Virus record (IMG/VR): IMGVR_UViG_3300024503_000485
Span: 124,001-188,000 of that record
DNA: 64,000 bases
Strand: one strand, 5' to 3'
The position numbers and the translations under genes are program-made. Below, piece after piece: positions 4,036 through 60,553 of the stretch (position 1 is its first letter; each line of letters starts with the position of its first letter). The notes under the pieces are model-generated. The model was given only the letters and a program-made list of their open reading frames with translations. It had not been told where the DNA came from and searched no databases.

Positions 4036-5145
4036 TTACTTTTTAAAAATACTTGTTGCACCTGATTTAACATTTTCGGTGAACAATTTCTTTTTGTGTT
4101 CTTCAATTTTTCTTTCAAGTGCTTCTGCCAAAGGATTACCTGTGTTAACTTTGCCAGCGGCTTGCACCGAAGGCTGAGCAGGAGCCTTAGCTCTTGATTT
4201 TCTCGGAGCACGTTTCTTTGTCTGCATTGTAGGTTCAACTGCGGGTTCTTGTGTTGCAGCTGGCTGTTCCGGTGCTGGTTGTTGTTGCATATTAGGATTG
4301 TTTGGATTTGCTGTATGGGTTGTTGTTCCACCAACCTTTGATGTTGTTCCACCAGTTGAGCTTGTTCCAGTGCTTACTGCCGGATTTGGTTCGCCGGCTA
4401 AGTTTGCTGCCATTTGTCCAAATGCACCTCCGCCTGCTGCTGGTTTTTCTTGTGCTGCTGGTTGTGCGCCTAATTCTTTTTGTAGTCCTGCAAGGATTCG
4501 TTGTTTACCTTTTTTATCTAGTTTAGCAATCTTAGCTTTAACCTGTGCATAAGGCGTGCCTTGTTGAGCTTGATCTTGTCCTTGACCACCTGCTGCTTGA
4601 CCTTGTGCGGGTTCCATAGTTGGTTCAATTCTTCCAGATGCATCAGGTTGTGCTGCTCCGCCTGCTGCTGGTTTTCCTTTTGCAGGTGCTGGTTGTCCGC
4701 TAGCGGCCGGTTGTTGGCCTCCTGCTTGACCTTGTGCGGGTTCTTCTTGATCTGTATCTTGCATTCCTGCTTTCTTGGCTGCATTAAGGAAAGGATTATT
4801 TTGACCAATCTTTCCTTTTTTCCACATATCTTGAGCAACTTGACGTTTAGTTATGCCTCCTTGACCACCTGCTGCTTGTTGACCACCGGCACCACCTGCT
4901 GCTTGTTGACCACCTGCTGCTTGACCTTGTGCGGGCTCTTCGTCATCTCCTGCACCTGCTACCGTACTTTTACCTGCGGCAAATCCTTTTTTAGCGGCTG
5001 CACCAAGTCCAGCTATACCACCTGCAACTGCGCCAACGCCTTTGGCAGCAGTTCCTACAGCTTTGCCAACTGCACTACCAATTTTATTCATCAATGGGCC
5101 TTCGGCAAGTTCTTTATCTTCGGTTATGAATTCATTTAATCTCAT
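4036..5145 (-). CDS. Gln/Ala/Gly/Pro-rich low-complexity putative virion (internal/ejected) protein
   Basis: 369 aa; starts MRLNEFITE; repeats of EPAQGQAAGGQ; lies downstream of the late promoter at 6691. Confidence 0.75.
   Translation of the reverse strand: MRLNEFITEDKELAEGPLMNKIGSAVGKAVGTAAKGVGAVAGGIAGLGAAAKKGFAAGKSTVAGAGDDEEPAQGQAAGGQQAAGGAGGQQAAGGQGGITKRQVAQDMWKKGKIGQNNPFLNAAKKAGMQDTDQEEPAQGQAGGQQPAASGQPAPAKGKPAAGGAAQPDASGRIEPTMEPAQGQAAGGQGQDQAQQGTPYAQVKAKIAKLDKKGKQRILAGLQKELGAQPAAQEKPAAGGGAFGQMAANLAGEPNPAVSTGTSSTGGTTSKVGGTTTHTANPNNPNMQQQPAPEQPAATQEPAVEPTMQTKKRAPRKSRAKAPAQPSVQAAGKVNTGNPLAEALERKIEEHKKKLFTENVKSGATSIFKK
4582..4935. repeat. 30-bp exact direct repeat (4582-4611 and 4906-4935) plus a 20-bp partial copy at 4721-4740
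   Basis: ttgaccacctgctgcttgaccttgtgcggg occurs twice; it encodes PAQGQAAGGQ. Confidence 0.9.
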
Positions 5146-5146
5146 T

Positions 5147-6664
5147 TTAAGCAGTTCCTAATTGTTTTTGTAAGAAGCCCATGATACGCTTTTTACTTTT
5201 CTTATCTAACTTAGCTAACTCTGATTTAACTTCTGCATATAGTGTAGCTGTTTTTTTACCATTGGCGCCACCTTGGCCACCTTGATCGGCACCGCCCTGA
5301 CCGGGTGGTGGTAGTTTCATTTGACTATAAACTTGTGTAACAATACCTGCATCAATGCCCTGATCTTGTAAAAACTTTGCTAGTTCTTCTGAATCTGTAG
5401 GAGCACCTGCTTTTTGCCAAGCAGAATTTAACTTGTCTGCCGTGACCTGTGTGGTCATGTTATGACCTTTTGTCTTGGCCCAATCAACTGCTTTGCCTGC
5501 TCCAGCTTTAACCTTGTCCATAAAGCCAGCTTCTGATAACACACGATTAAACACTAGATATACTTGACCTTCACTTAAAGGTCTAGTTTGAATATAATAA
5601 CTTTCTTGTTTTGGTTGTTTGCTGCCTGTACCAGCTGCAACTGCGCCTTGCGCAGCCGCGCCTAAGAATTTAAACACTTCTTTAGCACCTTCGGCAGCAG
5701 ATTTTAACATTGCTCGCTTGTCTGCTGTGGCAGCAATCTGAGCAATATACTCTGGATTATTAAATTTATCATCAATCATGCCCTGAAGAACTTGCCATAC
5801 CTTGTCGCTTTGAGCATAATCTCCTGCTTGCCAAGCAGAAGTAGCATCCATGAATAACTCTTTAGCATCTGCAATATCTGCTGGTTGTCCTACTAGTCCT
5901 TTAATTTCAAAGTTAGCAGAACGTGATCCTAACTCTCCCCCAACTTCATCAAAGATTTGAGTCATGTTTAATCTTCTAGCACCAGGGAATAGATTATCTT
6001 TGATAATATCAACTCCGCCACTGAGTGCATCGCCAATAAGTTCAAAGGTCTTACCAGCAATAAAACCATAGGCTGCTGTTTTAATACCTTTGCCAATGGT
6101 AGTTGAAAGTTTTTCGCCTTTGATTAGTTCAGACGAATTACGAATAATAGCACCTGCAATAGCGCCACCTACTGGGCCACCTGCAAGAGCTGCTAGAGTG
6201 GTAAGCACACCAATAATCGCTGCTGACTTACCTGGATTTTCTTTCATCCAAGTTCCCCATCCAGTTAGAGTTTTATCTAGCTCAGGAAACTTAGCACCAA
6301 CTTTAGCCTTTAAATCTTCAAACTTTTGGTCCATGTTCTTAACAGGCGTAGTATCCTGTAGCCATTTACCAACTTTATTAACTACTTCATCTGCTTTTTT
6401 AGCAACATCGATGCCTTTGCCCAGCATTGTTCTATTACCACCACCTGCACTTACACTTTGCTCTACAGATCCAAATACCTGTTTAACCTGTTCAGGGCTT
6501 AGACTAGCTTCGATAAGAGGTAGCATTTCATTATAAATGCCTTCAACAATTCTGCGTTGTTCCTTATTAAGACCGTCACAGCTTTCCTCTAATATTAATC
6601 GTGAGTTGTGCATATGTCTTTCGACAAGTAACTGATGATTTTCTAATAATGTTGATATTTTCAT
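5147..6664 (-). CDS. Putative virion internal/ejection protein with a hydrophobic helical hairpin
   Basis: 505 aa; hydrophobic segment SAAIIGVLTTLAALAGGPVGGAIAGAII; C-terminal module shared with 4036..5145; late promoter just upstream. Confidence 0.7.
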   Translation of the reverse strand: MKISTLLENHQLLVERHMHNSRLILEESCDGLNKEQRRIVEGIYNEMLPLIEASLSPEQVKQVFGSVEQSVSAGGGNRTMLGKGIDVAKKADEVVNKVGKWLQDTTPVKNMDQKFEDLKAKVGAKFPELDKTLTGWGTWMKENPGKSAAIIGVLTTLAALAGGPVGGAIAGAIIRNSSELIKGEKLSTTIGKGIKTAAYGFIAGKTFELIGDALSGGVDIIKDNLFPGARRLNMTQIFDEVGGELGSRSANFEIKGLVGQPADIADAKELFMDATSAWQAGDYAQSDKVWQVLQGMIDDKFNNPEYIAQIAATADKRAMLKSAAEGAKEVFKFLGAAAQGAVAAGTGSKQPKQESYYIQTRPLSEGQVYLVFNRVLSEAGFMDKVKAGAGKAVDWAKTKGHNMTTQVTADKLNSAWQKAGAPTDSEELAKFLQDQGIDAGIVTQVYSQMKLPPPGQGGADQGGQGGANGKKTATLYAEVKSELAKLDKKSKKRIMGFLQKQLGTA

Positions 6665-6690
6665 AAAAGACTCAAAATTGATATACTACT

Positions 6691-6697
6691 TATTTAT
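6691..6697 (-). promoter_or_regulatory. Late promoter ATAAATA
   Basis: 26 nt upstream of the ATG at 6664. Confidence 0.65.
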
Positions 6698-6699
6698 TG

Positions 6700-6721
6700 A
6701 AAAGCGAGCTAACGCTCGCTT
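6700..6721 (-). terminator. Probable intrinsic terminator of the 47-46-GIY-YIG-ncRNA transcript
   Basis: Perfect 8-bp stem AAGCGAGC/GCTCGCTT with a 4-nt loop; only a short U-run follows on the - strand. Confidence 0.5.
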
Positions 6722-6788
6722 GCTTTATCGCTTCGCTCAAAGCACTTTTCTTTTTTTTAATTATTTCAAAGATGCAGTTGAAATATAT

Positions 6789-7175
6789 TTTGCGCGAAGC
6801 GCAAATTTAGCATTATCCAGATCGTTTCAGTCACACTTTGCCCGTTGCCGGGCAAAGAAAAAACATTATCCGAGTCGAACCATGTCACACAGCAGTAGAG
6901 CATTACAGAGGCGGTTGTCCGGTACCTCGAGCTCCGTCTTTACACAACGGCGGTATACATTAATCTGCTATCACTAATGTACACGTGGGGTTTTTCTCCC
7001 CTCATTTTACCTTTACATATCCTTTTCAAACAACTAAATCGCAGGTTTTAAGCGATCTTCATCCATAAATGGGTAGTAGTTGAGTACCATTGCGGCATGG
7101 AATTCCGTCCCTGCGACCACGATTGACCAGGTTTAGAGCGCATGAAGTTAAGGCCTGCGCTAGCCAAAAACCGCT
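6789..7175 (-). ncRNA. Candidate large structured non-coding RNA; family not recognised
   Basis: No credible CDS; many stems; 9-bp stem with a GCAA (GNRA) tetraloop on the - strand (6857-6836); 12-bp stem whose loop can pair 7 bp downstream (pseudoknot); boundaries approximate. Confidence 0.6.
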
Positions 7176-7610
7176 TTATTTTGCCTTTTTATGTTCTTCT
7201 AGGCGTTGCCTTAGTATGTTTGAACCGCCTACTCTGACGTTTATAATGCCATTATAATATTCGTCAGTTTCTAAAACTCTGCGTTCAAACTGCTCTCTTG
7301 CCTCTAAATAGGACATTTCTGCCTTGGATTTGCAAAGATAAAGTATTTCTCTAGTGAAGTTTCCGGGACCTAATGCTTGGACGTCTGCGTTTAACCTATC
7401 AGAAGAACCCCAGTAATCGCGCCAATCGCTTTCAACTACGGATCTACGTTTAAGTTTTTTGCCTTTGAGTGGTGGTTTAGTACGTTTAAATTGTGCTAAT
7501 TTCTTGCCTATGTACTTCTGCCCGGTTTGTGTGTTCGTGATGAGATAAACAAAGCCAATATAGCCTTCTGGTATTTCGTTTATTGGTTGATTTTGATACG
7601 TCCATTGCAC
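7176..7610 (-). CDS. Stand-alone GIY-YIG family endonuclease (Seg-like catalytic domain only)
   Basis: GFVYLITN...KYIGKK, YWGSS, REIL...YLEAREQ, YYNG motifs; GTG start; 144 aa. Confidence 0.85.
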   Translation of the reverse strand: MQWTYQNQPINEIPEGYIGFVYLITNTQTGQKYIGKKLAQFKRTKPPLKGKKLKRRSVVESDWRDYWGSSDRLNADVQALGPGNFTREILYLCKSKAEMSYLEAREQFERRVLETDEYYNGIINVRVGGSNILRQRLEEHKKAK

Positions 7611-7841
7611 TCACTTAGTTATTTTAGGCGGTCTTCCAACCATGCCTTTTCTGGCTAACTTTCGTTGTTCGCGTTTTTCTTGTATCTCAACTCGCCTTTT
7701 TGATGCCTCGTTGCGTATTTCTGATAGCCAATATCGTGCCTTAATGCCTGCTTCATCTGAGCCTTTGTATTCAAATCGTTCTTGCCACTTAAAATATTCC
7801 TGAAAAGCAGCAATCATACGATCGTGCGATTCTGTTGTCAT
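7611..7841 (-). CDS. Hypothetical helical protein
   Basis: 76 aa; translationally coupled to its neighbours. Confidence 0.75.
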   Translation of the reverse strand: MTTESHDRMIAAFQEYFKWQERFEYKGSDEAGIKARYWLSEIRNEASKRRVEIQEKREQRKLARKGMVGRPPKITK

Positions 7842-8392
7842 AACAAAGGAGGGCCTTCAAAGAATTGAATAAGTGTTTTTCTAGTGCCTTTGGTTACTGG
7901 ATCAACTTTATGAGGAACCCAGCTAGGAAAAACTAACAATGTTCCTGGCAATCTAAATTCTTCAATTACATGAGGACCGTTGAAAAATAAACTTATATCA
8001 CCGCCCTCATACGGTTCGTCAGATAAGTTTAGTAATGCTGTTAATTTAATATCCTTAATACCATCTCTTCTCCCGTCGGTGTGCCAATCATATTCGCCGT
8101 TGGTTTTAGAATCGTAGGTATTGTAACTTAATATTGACTCGTACCCAATTGCGTCAAGATGAAATCTAAAAGCAAGGTTGTTAATAACACCAATTGATTC
8201 ATAAAATTTTTCTAATTCGGGGGATATAAATTTTCTGTTGATAAATTTTACATCGGCAGTTTTAGTTGCTCCATCTGCAGGAACATCTTTTACAGAATCG
8301 TCTCTATTATAATGTAATAGAATTAAAGTCCTGAGTTCTTCACACATTTCTGGTGTATAAAGTTCTTTAACATAATAAAAGTCATAAATCAT
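7838..8392 (-). CDS. 2OG-Fe(II) oxygenase (PKHD/prolyl-hydroxylase-like)
   Basis: YDWHTD (HxD), KLTALLNL, YEGG, FPSWVPHKV and RKTL motifs. Confidence 0.9.
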   Translation of the reverse strand: MIYDFYYVKELYTPEMCEELRTLILLHYNRDDSVKDVPADGATKTADVKFINRKFISPELEKFYESIGVINNLAFRFHLDAIGYESILSYNTYDSKTNGEYDWHTDGRRDGIKDIKLTALLNLSDEPYEGGDISLFFNGPHVIEEFRLPGTLLVFPSWVPHKVDPVTKGTRKTLIQFFEGPPLL

Positions 8393-10167
8393 TCTATAAT
8401 CTCCACATCGTTGCTGTAACTGGTAAATCCGTTTTCTTTAATAACTTTTAACACATGATTTACTCGATTTGTTAGATCATCTCTGTGAGAAATTAAGAAA
8501 ACATTTTTATTTCTTTCTCTAGTCATCTTCTTAAGTACCGCAATACTTGATTCTACTCCGCTGGCATCCATGCCGCTGTCTACAAGCTCATCAATAAACA
8601 ACAGGTTGATAGGATGATAAAGATTTTCCCACACATCTCGGAACGCCCAAGATAGAGATAAAATCAATCTGTTGCGTTCACCTCGACTTAAATTATCAAA
8701 ATCTAGGTCCTGGCCTAATTGAGTAATAATAACACTAAGATCATTTTGAAATTCTACAATATGAGGCAATCCTATTCTATCTAGATAATGAGTTAATCGT
8801 TGATTTAAGAATGCTAAGTTTTGATCGATAATACGTTTACGTACAAAACTATCTTTATTTGTTAAAAGTTTATGTAAAAACTCCTGATGATCTTTAACTC
8901 TTACAAGTTCGTTTAGGTTATTCCAGTCAATTTCTTGAACAGCAGTATTTTTTAATTCTAAGATTTGATCATCATAAGGGTTTTCTTCTGCTTCTTTAAT
9001 AGTAGCATCTCTTTCTAACCCATCTAATGTGTTTTTATGATTAAGTGCTTCTTCTAAATTGTCATAAGTTACTTTTGGACAAGCAGTTAGCTCACCTAAT
9101 AATGCCATTGCTTCGTTAAGAGTTGATAGTTCTTCTAAGTGTTCGTTAATAGAACCTTTACTTTCTTCAACTTGTTGAGCTTTTGCTACAAGCATTTCTT
9201 CATGTTTGTCATCATGTAACTCTTGACCACAAGCATGGCATTTATGATCTGCAAGACTAATAAGCTCTTTTTCTAATTTAGAAAGGACTTTTTGTTCTTT
9301 TTCTAATGCCGCTGTTTGTTTAGCAATTAAAGAATTAAGGTTATCTTTTTCTTTTTTGTTTTTATTCCATTCAACTAATGCTCGTTGATTTGATATTTCT
9401 TCTTCAATGTCAATTTGCATTAAACGATCAATACTTTTAAGTATATTTTCAAGAGAGGACTCTTTTTGATCGTTCCACATTTTTTGTTTACGCTCTAACG
9501 CTTCAATGCTTTGTTGAATGCGTTCATTACTAGCTTTAATTGTTTCTATTTTAGTATTTTCTGAAGTAATAGCATCTTTTGTTTGTTTGATTTGTTCTTT
9601 TAAATTTTCTGCTTTTTCTGATAAAAGTGTAATACCTAGTAATTGTTCAATAACGCTTCTTTGATCAGCAGCCTTCATTGATAAGAACGGTTCAGTATAA
9701 GTGTTCAACGCTAAAATGTGTTTAAACATTTCGTGACTCATACCAAATACATCTTCAATTGCTTTTTGTGTTTCTCGACTATCGCCTTGAGATTCGTCAA
9801 GGTCCTGTAATTCTTGTTCTTGACCGTTAATGCTAAATTTTAACAAGTTTGGTTTTCTACCACGTTCAATGTGATATTCAACGCCGTGTTTTTCAAAACT
9901 AATTGTGACTAACATTCCCTTTTGATTAATCTTGTTGATAAGGTTGTCACGTTTAATATTAGTCAGGGCTTGACCGTAGATCGCATAACTCAAGCCATTG
10001 ATGATAGTTGTTTTGCCCGTACCGTTGCGAGCCCCAGAATCATCACCTCCTAGATCTAGATTTTCACCTAAGACTAGAGTTAATTGACCACGGTCAAAAT
10101 CGATGGCTTGAGTTTGATTACCCACGCTCATGAAATTTCTTACGGTTAGATTCTTAATTTTAATCAT
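8389..10167 (-). CDS. gp46: Recombination endonuclease ATPase subunit (SbcC/Rad50, T4 gp46-like)
   Basis: Walker A NGTGKTT, coiled coil with CHAC zinc hook, LSRGE signature, Walker B LLFIDE. Confidence 0.95.
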   Translation of the reverse strand: MIKIKNLTVRNFMSVGNQTQAIDFDRGQLTLVLGENLDLGGDDSGARNGTGKTTIINGLSYAIYGQALTNIKRDNLINKINQKGMLVTISFEKHGVEYHIERGRKPNLLKFSINGQEQELQDLDESQGDSRETQKAIEDVFGMSHEMFKHILALNTYTEPFLSMKAADQRSVIEQLLGITLLSEKAENLKEQIKQTKDAITSENTKIETIKASNERIQQSIEALERKQKMWNDQKESSLENILKSIDRLMQIDIEEEISNQRALVEWNKNKKEKDNLNSLIAKQTAALEKEQKVLSKLEKELISLADHKCHACGQELHDDKHEEMLVAKAQQVEESKGSINEHLEELSTLNEAMALLGELTACPKVTYDNLEEALNHKNTLDGLERDATIKEAEENPYDDQILELKNTAVQEIDWNNLNELVRVKDHQEFLHKLLTNKDSFVRKRIIDQNLAFLNQRLTHYLDRIGLPHIVEFQNDLSVIITQLGQDLDFDNLSRGERNRLILSLSWAFRDVWENLYHPINLLFIDELVDSGMDASGVESSIAVLKKMTRERNKNVFLISHRDDLTNRVNHVLKVIKENGFTSYSNDVEIIE

Positions 10168-59029: not shown

Positions 59030-59031
59030 GA

Positions 59032-59262
59032 TTATTGTTCCTTTTTGCTAACAGAATCTAAAAATGTTGAAAGTCTATTATAAACTTTACCAACTGCTTC
59101 TAGTTCGTTTGCTTTAAATGCTCCACGTTGGCTAGCAACGTCGATAATGCTTTTTAGTGCTGTAAGGTCACTAACGTTTAAATCTGCAGAGTTTGCGGCC
59201 GGAGCTTCTGGAGCAGAAGCAGCTGGAGCAGTAGTTTGCAAATCTTTGTTTTCTTCAGTCAT
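59032..59262 (-). CDS. Hypothetical protein
   Basis: 76 aa; SD AAGGAG. Confidence 0.8.
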   Translation of the reverse strand: MTEENKDLQTTAPAASAPEAPAANSADLNVSDLTALKSIIDVASQRGAFKANELEAVGKVYNRLSTFLDSVSKKEQ

Positions 59263-59264
59263 TG

Positions 59265-59534
59265 TTATCTCCTTAATTTTGTACAGGCTAATGCAAAGAA
59301 TGTCATTTCTTTTTCATCTTCAAATCCAACATACGTTGAAGTTTTTAGATTTCCGTTCTCATCAAAAGACGGTATTTGTTTAATACAATATCTTCCTTTT
59401 AATTTAGAACGAATCCAATCATCTAATTCGTTATTATAAACATCTCTTTCGCTTAATTTCATTTTTAAAAAATGTGGCGGAATCCTAGTAAGTTTTCTAG
59501 TGTTCAAAACGTCTAACGGATTAAGATCATTCAT
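59265..59534 (-). CDS. Hypothetical protein
   Basis: 89 aa; preceded by tandem promoters. Confidence 0.75.
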   Translation of the reverse strand: MNDLNPLDVLNTRKLTRIPPHFLKMKLSERDVYNNELDDWIRSKLKGRYCIKQIPSFDENGNLKTSTYVGFEDEKEMTFFALACTKLRR

Positions 59535-59540
59535 ACGTGA

Positions 59541-59592
59541 TATTTATAGTAGTAGTTTATAATATTATACAGAATTGAAATGAAAATTTCAA
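59541..59592 (-). promoter_or_regulatory. Tandem promoters: sigma70-type TTGAAA-N17-TATAAT (59592-59564) and perfect T4 late consensus TATAAATA (59548-59541)
   Basis: Both motifs read directly from the sequence; 17-nt spacer counted. Confidence 0.75.
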
Positions 59593-59981: not shown

Positions 59982-60262
59982 TTTATCGGTTCACCTTGTG
60001 TTAATTTATATACTGCAAAATCTGTTGTTTTAAAAAGTTTGTTTAATTTTTTTGCTAGATTGTGTGCATGGCCTGGATTTGAAAAACTAACCTTTTTGTA
60101 TTTTGGTCCAGGATAGCTAGCCAACAGGCTTCCGCTCTTTAAATTAAAAGGCTGGCCTTTGTAGAATACTGCCCATATAGCTTCACTTTCAAGAATCTGT
60201 TCAACCTTGTAGTTTTCTTTATTGGCATATTCGAGTATTATCTTCGGTTTTGGTCTACTCAT
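59978..60262 (-). CDS. Hypothetical late protein
   Basis: 94 aa; late promoter and hairpin upstream. Confidence 0.8.
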   Translation of the reverse strand: MSRPKPKIILEYANKENYKVEQILESEAIWAVFYKGQPFNLKSGSLLASYPGPKYKKVSFSNPGHAHNLAKKLNKLFKTTDFAVYKLTQGEPIK

Positions 60263-60299
60263 TATATACGTGTTCCTAATTAACCACGTATATATTTAT
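60263..60299 (-). promoter_or_regulatory. Late promoter ATAAATA (60299-60293) overlapping a perfect 10-bp RBS-proximal hairpin
   Basis: Arms tatatacgtg (60263-60272) and cacgtatata (60285-60294); AGGA lies in the loop on the - strand. Confidence 0.7.
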
Positions 60300-60304
60300 C
60301 ACCT

Positions 60305-60553
60305 TTAGAACGTTCCGCCGTCAAACTTTACATCGATTTGAGTGGTTGATTCTTTAATTTCTTTCAATAAATCGCGAATTTCGGCAACCGTAGAACCTAA
60401 TTTAGTCGTTATAATAGCTAGTTCTTGTACTAGCTCTTTTCCTTCTTGAATAGATATACGTATATCTTTCTGTTGACTTTTTTCTGCTACATTTAATCGT
60501 TGAATAAGCCTTTCAACACTAGGTAATTTATCTGGTATATTATTTGCTGACAT
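60305..60553 (-). CDS. Hypothetical coiled-coil protein
   Basis: 82 aa; coupled to the upstream gene. Confidence 0.75.
   Translation of the reverse strand: MSANNIPDKLPSVERLIQRLNVAEKSQQKDIRISIQEGKELVQELAIITTKLGSTVAEIRDLLKEIKESTTQIDVKFDGGTF

What the first reader, a model, noticed from the sequence alone, without database searches (positions are those of the whole stretch)
6789..7175. Candidate ornate non-coding RNA of about 390 nt, with a pseudoknot and GNRA tetraloop, at the 3' end of the 47-46 operon
This is the only long non-coding stretch in an otherwise densely coding 64 kb window, and on the minus strand it is packed with stems. (1) AGCGCA/UGCGCU near 7161-7137. (2) A three-way junction closed by CAACUA/UAGUUG enclosing CCAU/AUGG and AUCGC/GCGAU stems (about 7083-7031). 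(3) GGGG/CCCC. (4) A 12-bp stem GUGUACAUUAGU/AUUAAUGUAUAC (6984-6953) whose loop AUAGCAG (6971-6965) can pair 7 bp with CUGCUGU (6895-6889), forming a pseudoknot across two further hairpins. (5) A 9-bp stem capped by GCAA (6857-6836). G-U pairs and the GNRA loop make sense only on the minus strand, the sense of the upstream operon. I do not recognise it as tRNA, tmRNA, RNase P RNA, an intron or a small ribozyme. It could be a new large phage RNA in the spirit of GOLLD or ROOL (inference).
Basis: partly seen in the sequence, partly recalled or inferred. Interest (0 to 1): 0.85.

Follow-up and report, generated by a model that had tools for sequence, protein, structure and literature searches.

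The report
Large phage RNA extending Polynucleobacter-1 motif
The stretch encodes a real, heavily knotted non-coding RNA of about 465 bases whose first third is the known Rfam motif Polynucleobacter-1 of unknown function; the rest is undescribed, rides behind a small GIY-YIG nuclease gene in hundreds of phage contigs, and carries two short segments that always mutate in step.

Summary
Window 7165-6700 (minus strand) is a structured non-coding RNA. Its 5' 138 nt (7165-7028) match Rfam RF01718, Polynucleobacter-1, at 100 bits (cut-off 37), so it is not wholly new. Conservation and compensatory base changes continue about 330 nt further in more than 70 non-redundant viral homologues. The RNA therefore ends near 6700, not 6789. 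The GNRA loop is not conserved.

In phage contigs a roughly 144-aa GIY-YIG gene lies just upstream in most loci (68 of 83 in an independent sample). Bacterial copies in freshwater Burkholderiales lack it. The nuclease family also occurs without the RNA.

The most widespread part is the undescribed 3' module. Two 16-nt single-stranded segments (6877-6862 and 6824-6809) have identical variable letters in 191 of 193 loci (at least 16 variants). No complementary partner was found nearby.

Best reading: an autonomous large RNA, co-transcribed with the nuclease gene, that acts through these twin segments on one shared partner. That mechanism is inferred and the function is unknown.

The parts
6700..7165 (-). 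Whole conserved non-coding RNA (about 465 nt), domains D1-D3
   Evidence: Conservation runs along the whole stretch in 100 viral homologues. nhmmer profiles of all three domains hit relatives at E 1e-23 to 1e-36. There is no conserved ORF.
7028..7165 (-). D1 = Rfam RF01718 Polynucleobacter-1. Contains P1 7160-56/7142-38, P2 7130-24/7119-11, P3 7100-97/7090-87, a three-way junction P4 7082-77/7036-31, P5, and P6 7057-52/7042-37. A 5' pseudoknot pairs 7165-63 with 7154-52.
   Evidence: cmscan 100.2 bits against a gathering score of 37, model positions 1-141 of 141. Compensatory changes.
6882..7027 (-). D2. Contains hairpin P8 7001-6998/6990-87, long hairpin P9 6984-73/6964-53, P10 6934-31/6901-6898 and P11 6928-25/6911-08. 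It carries the conserved GGUACCGG..AACCGCC.
   Evidence: No Rfam match.
6889..6971 (-).
   Evidence: 93% canonical, all 7 pairs with changes on both sides, slid controls 24-45%. High mutual information.
6914..6948 (-). Pseudoknot PK-D: 6948-6944 pairs with the P11 loop 6918-6914
   Evidence: 98% canonical, with 24, 15 and 11 double changes. The competing local hairpin 6950-46/6938-34 has none.
6862..6877 (-). Twin segment 1 (CG ACUC GG AU A A U G UU)
   Evidence: Its variable letters are identical to those of segment 2 in 99 of 100 and 92 of 93 loci. Mutual information equals the full entropy.
6836..6857 (-). Hairpin P13 between the twin segments. Its lower 4 bp (6857-54) can pair instead with 6941-6938.
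   Evidence: 96% canonical. The alternative pairing is 93.5% canonical with double changes.
6809..6824 (-). Twin segment 2 (CG AUCU GG AU A A U G CU)
   Evidence: As for segment 1. The fixed differences CUC/UCU and G/A hold in every homologue.
6789..6805 (-). Variable UUCG-capped hairpin. It is poorly conserved and absent in some homologues.
6720..6745 (-). Hairpin P15 with the conserved loop GAGCG-NN-AGCGA
   Evidence: Double changes at all 7 pairs. The loop is conserved in marine and bacterial variants.
6702..6721 (-). Terminal hairpin followed by a U-rich tract (probable 3' end or terminator)
   Evidence: 94.5% canonical, 8 of 8 pairs with double changes. It does not meet the strict terminator scan, having only 3-4 U.
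7176..7610 (-). GIY-YIG nuclease gene (144 aa, catalytic domain only), immediately upstream of the RNA
   Evidence: Pfam PF19835 at 3.6e-36. PHROG 447. AF2 model with pLDDT 84, best PDB match the I-TevI catalytic domain. Same-strand upstream neighbour in nearly all phage loci.
6691..6698 (-). AATAAATA, similar to the T4 late promoter, ahead of the 505-aa ORF (inference)
   Evidence: Read directly from the sequence. Similar motifs occur in L140 and L135.

Best explanation
Window 7165-6700 (minus strand) is the gene for a large, modular, pseudoknot-rich non-coding RNA.

- D1 is the Rfam motif Polynucleobacter-1.
- D2 and D3 are undescribed.
- D3 is the part shared by the widest range of homologues. 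It holds two single-stranded 16-nt twin segments either side of hairpin P13, then hairpin P15 and a terminal hairpin.

The RNA is made on the minus strand as the tail of the GIY-YIG transcription unit and ends at the terminal hairpin (inferred). It is an autonomous functional RNA rather than a regulator of its neighbours. Homologues sit in bacterial chromosomes next to quite different genes, and the nuclease family exists without the RNA.

My proposed mode of action is inferred, at about 0.3-0.35 on its own. The pseudoknotted core presents the two twin segments, and both base-pair with the same kind of trans partner. That partner would be two sites or two molecules of one nucleic acid, roughly 5'-U N U Y A U N N G G G U-3'. 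G.U wobble would absorb the four fixed differences between the copies.

In phages the linkage to the GIY-YIG gene most likely reflects co-transcription, and travel together with a Seg-like endonuclease. It probably does not reflect an obligate ribonucleoprotein.

The confidence of 0.5 is for the package as a whole. A real structured RNA with an RF01718 5' domain is above 0.95. Autonomy from the nuclease is about 0.65. The shared nucleic-acid partner is about 0.3-0.35.
For: Structured RNA:
- Rfam gives 100.2 bits.
- 28 of 47 RNAalifold pairs carry compensatory changes.
- The curated helices and pseudoknots are 93-100% canonical with many double changes, far above the slid and shuffled controls.
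- There is no conserved ORF.
- G.U pairs and the Rfam strand point to the minus strand.

Full length:
- D1, D2 and D3 profiles all hit relatives.
- The flanks of the original 2010 alignment already show the same 3' sequence.

Autonomy:
- 30 bacterial contigs, mostly Burkholderiales, carry the RNA at 85-102 bits. They have no GIY-YIG gene and instead a divergent DUF6641 gene.
- GIY-YIG homologues at 46-64% identity in cultured phages have no such RNA downstream.

Linkage in phages:
- A same-strand ORF of about 144 aa ends 20-55 nt before D1 in nearly all of 121 loci.
- In an independent sample, 68 of 83 loci have GIY-YIG directly upstream. Of the 15 without a detectable homologue, four were checked: one has a longer GIY-YIG+NUMOD3 protein and one has an intervening ORF.

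Twin segments:
- The variable letters are identical in 99 of 100 and 92 of 93 loci, with at least 16 variants. The second sample was found without using segment 1.
- The label changes at least 30 times on a tree built from the 5' domain.
- All four fixed differences are transitions, which is compatible with wobble pairing to one partner.
- The same rule holds in bacterial and marine variants.
Against: - Transcription, RNA ends and stability are not shown. Metatranscriptome contigs cover the locus, but a DNA run shows the same profile.
- No partner for the twin segments was found in the RNA, within +-6 kb, or in the 64-kb window. Pairing with a trans nucleic acid is therefore only the simplest reading of identity covariation.
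- A dimeric protein reader is not excluded.
- The terminal hairpin has a short U tract and fails the terminator scan.
- Recombination between elements could inflate the count of independent co-changes. The hard minimum is about 6 double events.
- The strict adjacency to GIY-YIG in phages could still mean a functional partnership.
Confidence: 0.5

Rival explanations
1. RNA-guided or RNA-scaffolded nuclease. The 144-aa GIY-YIG protein has no DNA-binding domain. It would use the RNA as scaffold and the twin segments as paired guides, for example one for each strand of a near-palindromic DNA site.
For: - The RNA sits next to the nuclease gene in phage lineages with very different gene orders.
- The protein is a catalytic domain only.
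- The two guide-like single-stranded segments vary in step.
- There is a precedent: the HEARO RNA next to an HNH nuclease gene turned out to be the guide RNA of IscB (my own knowledge).
Against: - Bacterial copies keep the twin-segment rule but have no GIY-YIG gene.
- The same nuclease family is present in 520 phage records, and the two I checked downstream (Melnitz and S-SRM01) have no such RNA.
- One RNA-linked homologue carries its own NUMOD3 DNA-binding motif.
- Segment diversity is low for a guide.
- A search for inverted-repeat targets gave chance-level results.
- No protein residue tracks the segment variants.
Confidence: 0.1
2. Protein decoy or platform. The twin segments are two identical binding sites for a homodimeric or tandem RNA- or DNA-binding protein of the host or phage. 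That protein's specificity would differ between lineages, and the RNA would sequester or assemble it.
For: - Two equal sites lie 53 nt apart. Each sits about 14 nt downstream of a helix's 3' strand and follows a conserved GUGAC or GUGGC.
- No nucleic-acid partner was found.
Against: - At least 16 variants and at least 30 apparent switches would need a matching change of protein specificity each time.
- The fixed differences are all wobble-compatible transitions, which base pairing explains but protein reading does not.
- No linked protein is common to the phage and bacterial loci.
Confidence: 0.15
3. The RNA is a cis-acting 3' UTR element that controls stability, processing or translation of the GIY-YIG mRNA, or the read-through into the next gene.
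For: - The RNA starts 10-50 nt after the stop codon and ends in a hairpin.
- The alternative pairing of 6941-38 with the base of P13 looks like a switch.
Against: - About 465 nt with five tertiary pairings is far beyond known 3' UTR elements.
- Bacterial copies are not downstream of any gene on the same strand.
- The downstream genes vary in identity and strand.
Confidence: 0.07
4. It is not an RNA gene in its own right. It would be a self-splicing intron or ribozyme remnant, or a DNA-level element such as iterons, an origin or recombination sites, with the direct repeats acting as DNA.
For: - GIY-YIG genes often live inside group I introns (my own knowledge).
- Direct repeats that change in step are typical of protein-bound DNA iterons.
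Against: - No Rfam intron hit appears even at E 10.
- There is no split host gene, and the flanking genes are complete and variable.
- Dozens of compensatory, G.U-containing, strand-specific pairs show selection at the RNA level.
Confidence: 0.03

Closest known systems
Polynucleobacter-1 RNA motif (Rfam RF01718; Weinberg et al. 2010, PMC2864571)
   Same: Window 7165-7028 matches the whole 141-position model at 100.2 bits. It has the same helices and the same freshwater setting. The function is unknown in both.
   Different: - The published motif stops after 141 nt. Its authors noted that its own 3' half was not always detected, and they found it in no purified phage.
- Here the conserved RNA is about 465 nt. 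It has two further domains, several pseudoknots and twin co-varying segments.
- It is abundant in T4-like and jumbo-phage contigs.
- By a sequence-profile (nhmmer) search, which is less sensitive than a covariance model, D1 is detectable in only about 40-55% of loci that carry the 3' module.
GOLLD and ROOL large ornate RNAs (bioRxiv 10.1101/2024.12.08.627333)
   Same: Both are large, pseudoknotted, non-coding RNAs of unknown function. Both are found in phages or prophages and in bacteria, and both were discovered by comparative genomics.
   Different: - There is no sequence or structure match (Rfam).
- This RNA is smaller.
- Nothing here shows multimer formation.
- As far as I know, GOLLD and ROOL are not tied to a nuclease gene and have no twin co-varying segments.
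HEARO / omega RNA of IscB, and TnpB guide RNAs (my own knowledge)
   Same: A structured RNA of a few hundred nt is encoded next to a small nuclease gene in a mobile context.
   Different: - Those nucleases are RuvC/HNH rather than GIY-YIG.
- Their guide lies at an RNA end and derives from flanking DNA, and it is hypervariable.
- Here the RNA ends in a hairpin and the variable letters are few and internal.
- Bacterial copies have no nuclease.
T4 Seg-type free-standing GIY-YIG homing endonucleases, e.g. SegB in the tRNA gene cluster (my own knowledge)
   Same: A GIY-YIG catalytic domain of the SegE family sits beside stable-RNA genes in a T4-like genome, so linkage may arise by co-conversion.
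   Different: - The window protein lacks the C-terminal DNA-binding region.
- The gene is syntenic and more conserved than gene 46 across distant relatives: 68-77% against 57-60%.
- It is near-universal in cyanomyoviruses. That is unlike a sporadic selfish gene.

Membership tests
Rfam RF01718 Polynucleobacter-1 | Covariance-model score at or above the curated gathering score (37 bits) over the full model | tested here: met
   100.2 bits, E 1.7e-20, model positions 1-141 of 141, window 7028-7165 minus strand
Rfam RF01718 Polynucleobacter-1 | The model's helices are kept through compensatory changes among homologues | tested here: met
   P1, P2, P4 and P6 are 94-100% canonical with double changes. 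P3 covaries on a local re-alignment.
Rfam RF01718 Polynucleobacter-1 | Context given by the authors: next to GOS11034-family genes, with possible homology to P-SSM2 ORF 218 | not testable with these tools
   The neighbour here is a GIY-YIG gene whose family is common in cyanophages. I could not check whether it is the same as GOS11034.
GOLLD, ROOL, HEARO, OLE, raiA and all other Rfam 15 families | Covariance-model match | tested here: not met
   RF01718 is the only hit at gathering score. In 6600-7300 nothing else scores better than E 0.05 or comes near its cut-off.
Group I intron with homing-endonuclease ORF | Intron core (Rfam RF00028) and a host gene split into two exons | tested here: not met
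   No Rfam hit. The upstream and downstream ORFs are complete, unrelated and variable in strand.
tRNA / tmRNA | tRNA-like domain detectable by ARAGORN | tested here: not met
   ARAGORN found 0 genes in the whole window
OMEGA-type guide RNA (IscB/TnpB) | Adjacent RuvC-family nuclease, with a terminal hypervariable guide taken from flanking DNA | tested here: not met
   The nuclease is GIY-YIG. The RNA ends in a conserved hairpin. The variable letters are internal and number only 4-8.
Type III toxin-antitoxin RNA | Tandem head-to-tail repeats of about 36 nt upstream of an endoribonuclease toxin gene | tested here: not met
   There are two 16-nt repeats 53 nt apart, embedded in a 465-nt structured RNA downstream of a GIY-YIG gene.
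Seg-type free-standing GIY-YIG homing endonuclease (the neighbouring protein) | GIY-YIG catalytic fold with the conserved Tyr/Arg/Glu/Asn residues | tested here: met
   PF19835 at 3.6e-36. The invariant residues are Y22, Y33, R87, E103 and N120. Foldseek's best hit is I-TevI 1ln0, probability 0.98.
Seg-type free-standing GIY-YIG homing endonuclease (the neighbouring protein) | C-terminal DNA-binding module (NUMOD or helix-turn-helix) and a sporadic, mobile distribution | tested here: inconclusive
   The window protein has only about 20 residues after the catalytic domain. One relative has NUMOD3. The gene is syntenic across distant relatives yet sits in several unrelated contexts.

The most novel reading that the evidence does not exclude
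The RNA and the domain-only GIY-YIG protein form a ribonucleoprotein endonuclease. The two co-varying segments would act as paired guides, one for each strand or half-site of a DNA target. This would be a new, GIY-YIG-based class of RNA-guided nuclease in phages.
Probability: 0.08. Interest if true: 0.95.

Novelty: new variant of a known kind. Interest (0 to 1): 0.62.

Why it matters
- It redefines a 15-year-old orphan Rfam motif as the 5' third of a much larger RNA, and it puts that RNA into phage biology. There are hundreds of copies in T4-like and jumbo-phage contigs, plus related copies in the probable freshwater hosts.
- Large, multiply pseudoknotted RNAs are rare. They have repeatedly turned out to be ribozymes, guide RNAs or self-assembling particles.
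- The twin segments give a concrete handle on function. Two sites change together at least 16 ways without a visible partner, so that partner can be looked for directly.
- Cultured carriers exist for the bacterial form (Polynucleobacter and Limnohabitans isolates). The unknown function is therefore experimentally approachable.

Tried and rejected
- **blastn against cultured phages.** A blastn (distant) search of the intergenic region found no match, so there is no isolate with the window-type RNA.
- **The 505-aa downstream ORF.** It has no Pfam, PHROG or phage tblastn hit. It is not consistently linked to the RNA.
- **Coding potential.** The 45-aa ORF 6766-6903 is not conserved.
- **A helix between the two N7 spacers, which would give a two-fold symmetric fold.** Complementarity is no better than with mismatched partners: 3.47 against 3.37. 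Rejected.
- **Direct pairing of segment 1 with segment 2.** This works only for the GG variant. Rejected by hand analysis.
- **The U-rich joiner 7033-7026 as partner.** It pairs through G.U with most variants, but it is invariant and cannot explain the identity.
- **Protein residues tracking the segment variants.** None were found beyond phylogenetic signal.
- **A complementary site in gene 46 mRNA (8777-8790).** It is 12 of 12 pairs, but only in the window lineage, so it is at chance level.
- **Inverted-repeat DNA targets in viral contigs.** One hit against about 0.7 expected. The second pattern was too loose.
- **Metatranscriptome contigs.** They have the same profile as a DNA run, so they give no evidence either way.
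- **DUF6641 against GIY-YIG.** A profile comparison shows no relation.
- **PADLOC and NCBIfam.** Nothing informative.
- **PDB sequence search with the nuclease.** No hit.
- **Column-wise counts for P3, P8 and the pseudoknot 7046-43/7012-09.** They are unreliable in the MAFFT alignment because of indels. My hairpin finder for P8 mostly picked P9 instead.

Full report
**What is there**

The window has a 511-nt gap (6665-7175). It lies between the stop of a 144-aa ORF (7176-7610, minus) and the start of a 505-aa ORF (5147-6664, minus).
- The upstream ORF is a GIY-YIG nuclease of the SegE type (Pfam PF19835, 3.6e-36).
- Further upstream lie a 76-aa ORF, a 2OG-Fe(II) oxygenase and homologues of T4 genes 46 and 47.
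- Gene 46 is 49% identical to that of Pseudomonas jumbo phage PA5oct and 48% to Agrobacterium phage Atu_ph07. The window is therefore from an uncultured jumbo phage with T4-like core genes.
- No conserved ORF lies in the gap, and ARAGORN finds no tRNA or tmRNA.

**It is partly a known RNA**

A scan of the whole window against Rfam 15 gives one hit, RF01718 Polynucleobacter-1. It covers 7028-7165 on the minus strand at 100.2 bits against a gathering score of 37, over the full model.

The family was described by Weinberg et al. 2010 (PMC2864571). Their description says:
- There were 16 examples, from environmental sequence and from one Polynucleobacter genome.
- The function was unknown.
- The examples lay near genes of one GOS family with possible homology to a cyanophage ORF.
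- The motif was not detected in any sequenced purified phage.

The full-text library holds no later paper naming the motif.

**The RNA is three times longer than the Rfam model**

Conservation in these runs from 7165 to about 6700, with one variable insert. The flanks printed in the 2010 alignment already show the same downstream sequence.

On 74 sequences below 92% identity (alignment A1):
- RNAalifold predicts 47 pairs, and 28 of them carry compensatory changes.
- My own counts on a curated structure give 93-100% canonical pairing with many double changes for P1, P2, P4, P5, P6, P10, P11 and P13, for the terminal hairpin and for the pseudoknots below. P9 is 88% canonical and P15 is 79%, in both cases with double changes at every pair.
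- Slid-partner controls fall to 1-73% canonical, almost always far below the observed value, and shuffled partners also score lower.

Four further pairings cross these helices:
- 7165-63 with 7154-52.
- 6971-65 with 6895-89. It is 93% canonical and all seven pairs covary.
- 6948-44 with 6918-14. This is 98% canonical. The competing local hairpin has no double change.
- 6941-38 with 6857-54, which competes with the base of P13.

A fifth candidate is 7046-43 with 7012-09. It has mutual-information support but aligns badly.

G.U pairs and the Rfam strand fix the sense as minus. The MFE z-scores are -2.74 on minus and -2.06 on plus.

**The RNA is modular**

Sequence profiles of D1 (7168-7027), D2 (7026-6882) and D3 (6881-6700) all hit the closer relatives at E 1e-23 to 1e-36.
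- Marine relatives with the same gene order match only D3, at E down to 1e-18. Rfam does not see them.
- Read by eye, they keep the twin segments, P13, P15 and the terminal hairpin behind a different 5' part.
Of its 95 usable loci, 37 have D1+D2+D3, 14 have D2+D3, and 31 have D3 alone.

D3 has no Rfam family and is the common denominator.

**Twin segments**

The two 16-nt stretches are 6877-6862 and 6824-6809. Each lies about 14 nt downstream of a helix's 3' strand and follows a conserved GUGAC or GUGGC.

They share the form NN-A-(CUC or UCU)-NN-AU-R-A-N-(G or A)-NN.
- The variable letters are the same in both copies in 99 of 100 loci of the first sample.
- They are the same in 92 of 93 loci of the second sample, which was found without reference to segment 1.
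- Mutual information equals the full column entropy.
- At least 16 variants exist.
- On a tree built from the 5' 287 nt, the label changes at least 30 times, and both copies change together each time. Recombination could inflate this figure. About six double events is the floor.
- The rule also holds in bacterial copies (ACUCAKCGAAAG and AUCUAKCGAAAG) and in marine copies.
- The differences between the two copies are fixed in all homologues. All four are transitions (CUC against UCU, G against A).

That is what one expects if both copies pair, with G.U wobble, to one sequence. It is not what gene conversion or a protein reader would predict.

No complementary, covarying partner exists in the RNA, within +-6 kb, or in the 64-kb window. 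The segments cannot pair with each other across variants. No helix joins their spacers.

**Neighbours**

In phage loci:
- A same-strand ORF of about 144 aa ends 20-55 nt before D1 in nearly every case. The downstream gene varies in size and strand, and the upstream context falls into several unrelated groups.
- In the independent sample, 68 of 83 loci have the GIY-YIG gene directly upstream. Of the 15 without a detectable homologue, four were checked: one has a 397-aa GIY-YIG+NUMOD3 protein and one has an extra ORF in between.
- The protein is a catalytic domain only. The AF2 model has pLDDT 84, and its best PDB match is the I-TevI catalytic domain.
- The order gene 46, orf76, GIY-YIG, RNA, orf505 is kept in relatives whose gene 46 is only 57-60% identical, while GIY-YIG is 68-77% identical.

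The link is not mutual:
- The nuclease family (PHROG 447, widely mislabelled NAD synthetase) is in 520 phage records, including 339 Synechococcus phages.
- The nearest isolate is Methylophilales phage Melnitz, at 64% identity. It has no such RNA downstream, and neither does S-SRM01.
- A scan of one genome per species found the D1 pattern in 30 bacterial contigs, most of them freshwater Burkholderiales. Examples are Limnohabitans, Polynucleobacter, Comamonadaceae and a complete 2.4-Mb chromosome. The six I scanned score 85-102 bits against RF01718.
- The Burkholderiales-type bacterial copies have no GIY-YIG gene. The only two contigs that do (L271, L273) are short MAG contigs carrying the phage-type RNA.
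- Where I examined the neighbours, a DUF6641 gene (PHROG 31551) lies divergently upstream. In two loci (L296, L276) a short tyrosine recombinase lies nearby, and housekeeping genes flank the module.

**Interpretation**

Shown:
- A conserved, strand-specific, pseudoknotted RNA structure of about 465 nt.
- Membership of its 5' domain in RF01718.
- The GIY-YIG linkage in phages, and its absence in bacteria.
- The identity covariation of the twin segments.

Inferred:
- Co-transcription with GIY-YIG.
- A 3' end at the terminal hairpin.
- A late-type promoter for the next gene.
- Action in trans through the twin segments on one shared nucleic-acid partner.

The twin-segment rule survives in bacterial copies that lack the nuclease, and the nuclease family lives without the RNA. 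I therefore rank an autonomous RNA above an RNA-guided GIY-YIG nuclease (about 0.1), a protein decoy (about 0.15), a cis-acting UTR (about 0.07) and an intron or DNA element (about 0.03).

Transcription itself is untested. Metatranscriptome contigs from riverine samples cover the locus, but a DNA run from the same kind of sample gives the same profile.

**Verdict**

The finding is real and the structural reading was good. The RNA is not wholly new, because its 5' third is Polynucleobacter-1.

The full-length architecture, the phage and GIY-YIG association, the wider D3 module and the twin segments appear undescribed. This rests on Rfam 15 and a full-text search.

I file it as a new variant of a known kind, with interest 0.62.

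Noticed in passing
window 7176-7610; phage records: The GIY-YIG family (PHROG 447) is annotated as NAD synthetase in many GenBank phage records and in PHROGs. Pfam, the conserved residues and the predicted fold all say GIY-YIG nuclease, so this looks like a propagated misannotation.
   Followed up: partly
L294:1396-1857, L296:7274-7711, L276:5329-5769: In the bacterial loci whose neighbours I examined, the RNA has a divergently oriented DUF6641 (PF20346, PHROG 31551) gene just upstream and a 137-142-aa ORF beyond it. In two loci (L296, L276) a 188-194-aa tyrosine recombinase lies nearby. The module sits between housekeeping genes, like a small island.
   Followed up: partly
L270 (Limnohabitans sp. 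Bal53, second copy): This genome has two copies. One follows the full RNA for about 190 nt and then diverges completely, so it is a truncated or disrupted copy. This fits the 2010 remark that the 3' half is not always detected.
   Followed up: no
window 8777-8790 (within gene 46): The gene 46 mRNA carries CAUUAUCUAGAU, which pairs 12 of 12 (one G.U) with twin segment 2. It is present only in the window lineage and is at chance level for 64 kb.
   Followed up: yes
window 5147-6664 and 4036-5145: The 505-aa and 369-aa ORFs share a 30-residue stretch at 63% identity (505-aa residues 474-503 against 369-aa residues 197-226). Neither protein has any Pfam, PHROG or cultured-phage match.
   Followed up: no
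window 59030-59588 and 59982-60539: These are two further stretches of about 560 nt without any ORF of 100 aa or more. Only 60-99-aa ORFs cover them, and there is no Rfam hit.
   Followed up: no
window 7176 (loose ends): Contigs in three metatranscriptome runs and one DNA run match the GIY-YIG ORF up to its stop, then continue with unrelated sequence (...CACCGGTGCGGGTTTTTTTGGCGA). This implies close GIY-YIG relatives in the same community with something other than this RNA downstream.
   Followed up: no
L135-L147 versus window 7176-10167: Between the window and the marine relatives, the GIY-YIG protein is more conserved (68-77%) than gene 46 (57-60%) or the 505-aa ORF (about 38%). This could mean strong constraint or recent horizontal spread.
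   Followed up: no
L335:9338-10531: One RNA-linked homologue is a 397-aa protein with the same GIY-YIG domain plus a NUMOD3 DNA-binding motif, the classic homing-endonuclease layout.
   Followed up: partly
L149:4514-4566: An unrelated small phage has a perfect 14-bp inverted repeat, CATTATCCGAGTTG ... CAACTCGGATAATG, inside a 148-aa ORF. It matches segment 1 of the window in 13 of 14 positions. About one such hit is expected by chance.
   Followed up: partly
window 7073 and 7061: There is non-Watson-Crick covariation in the P5 internal loop: C/U in 47 sequences switches to U/C in 28, never to a canonical pair. This suggests a conserved non-canonical contact.
   Followed up: no
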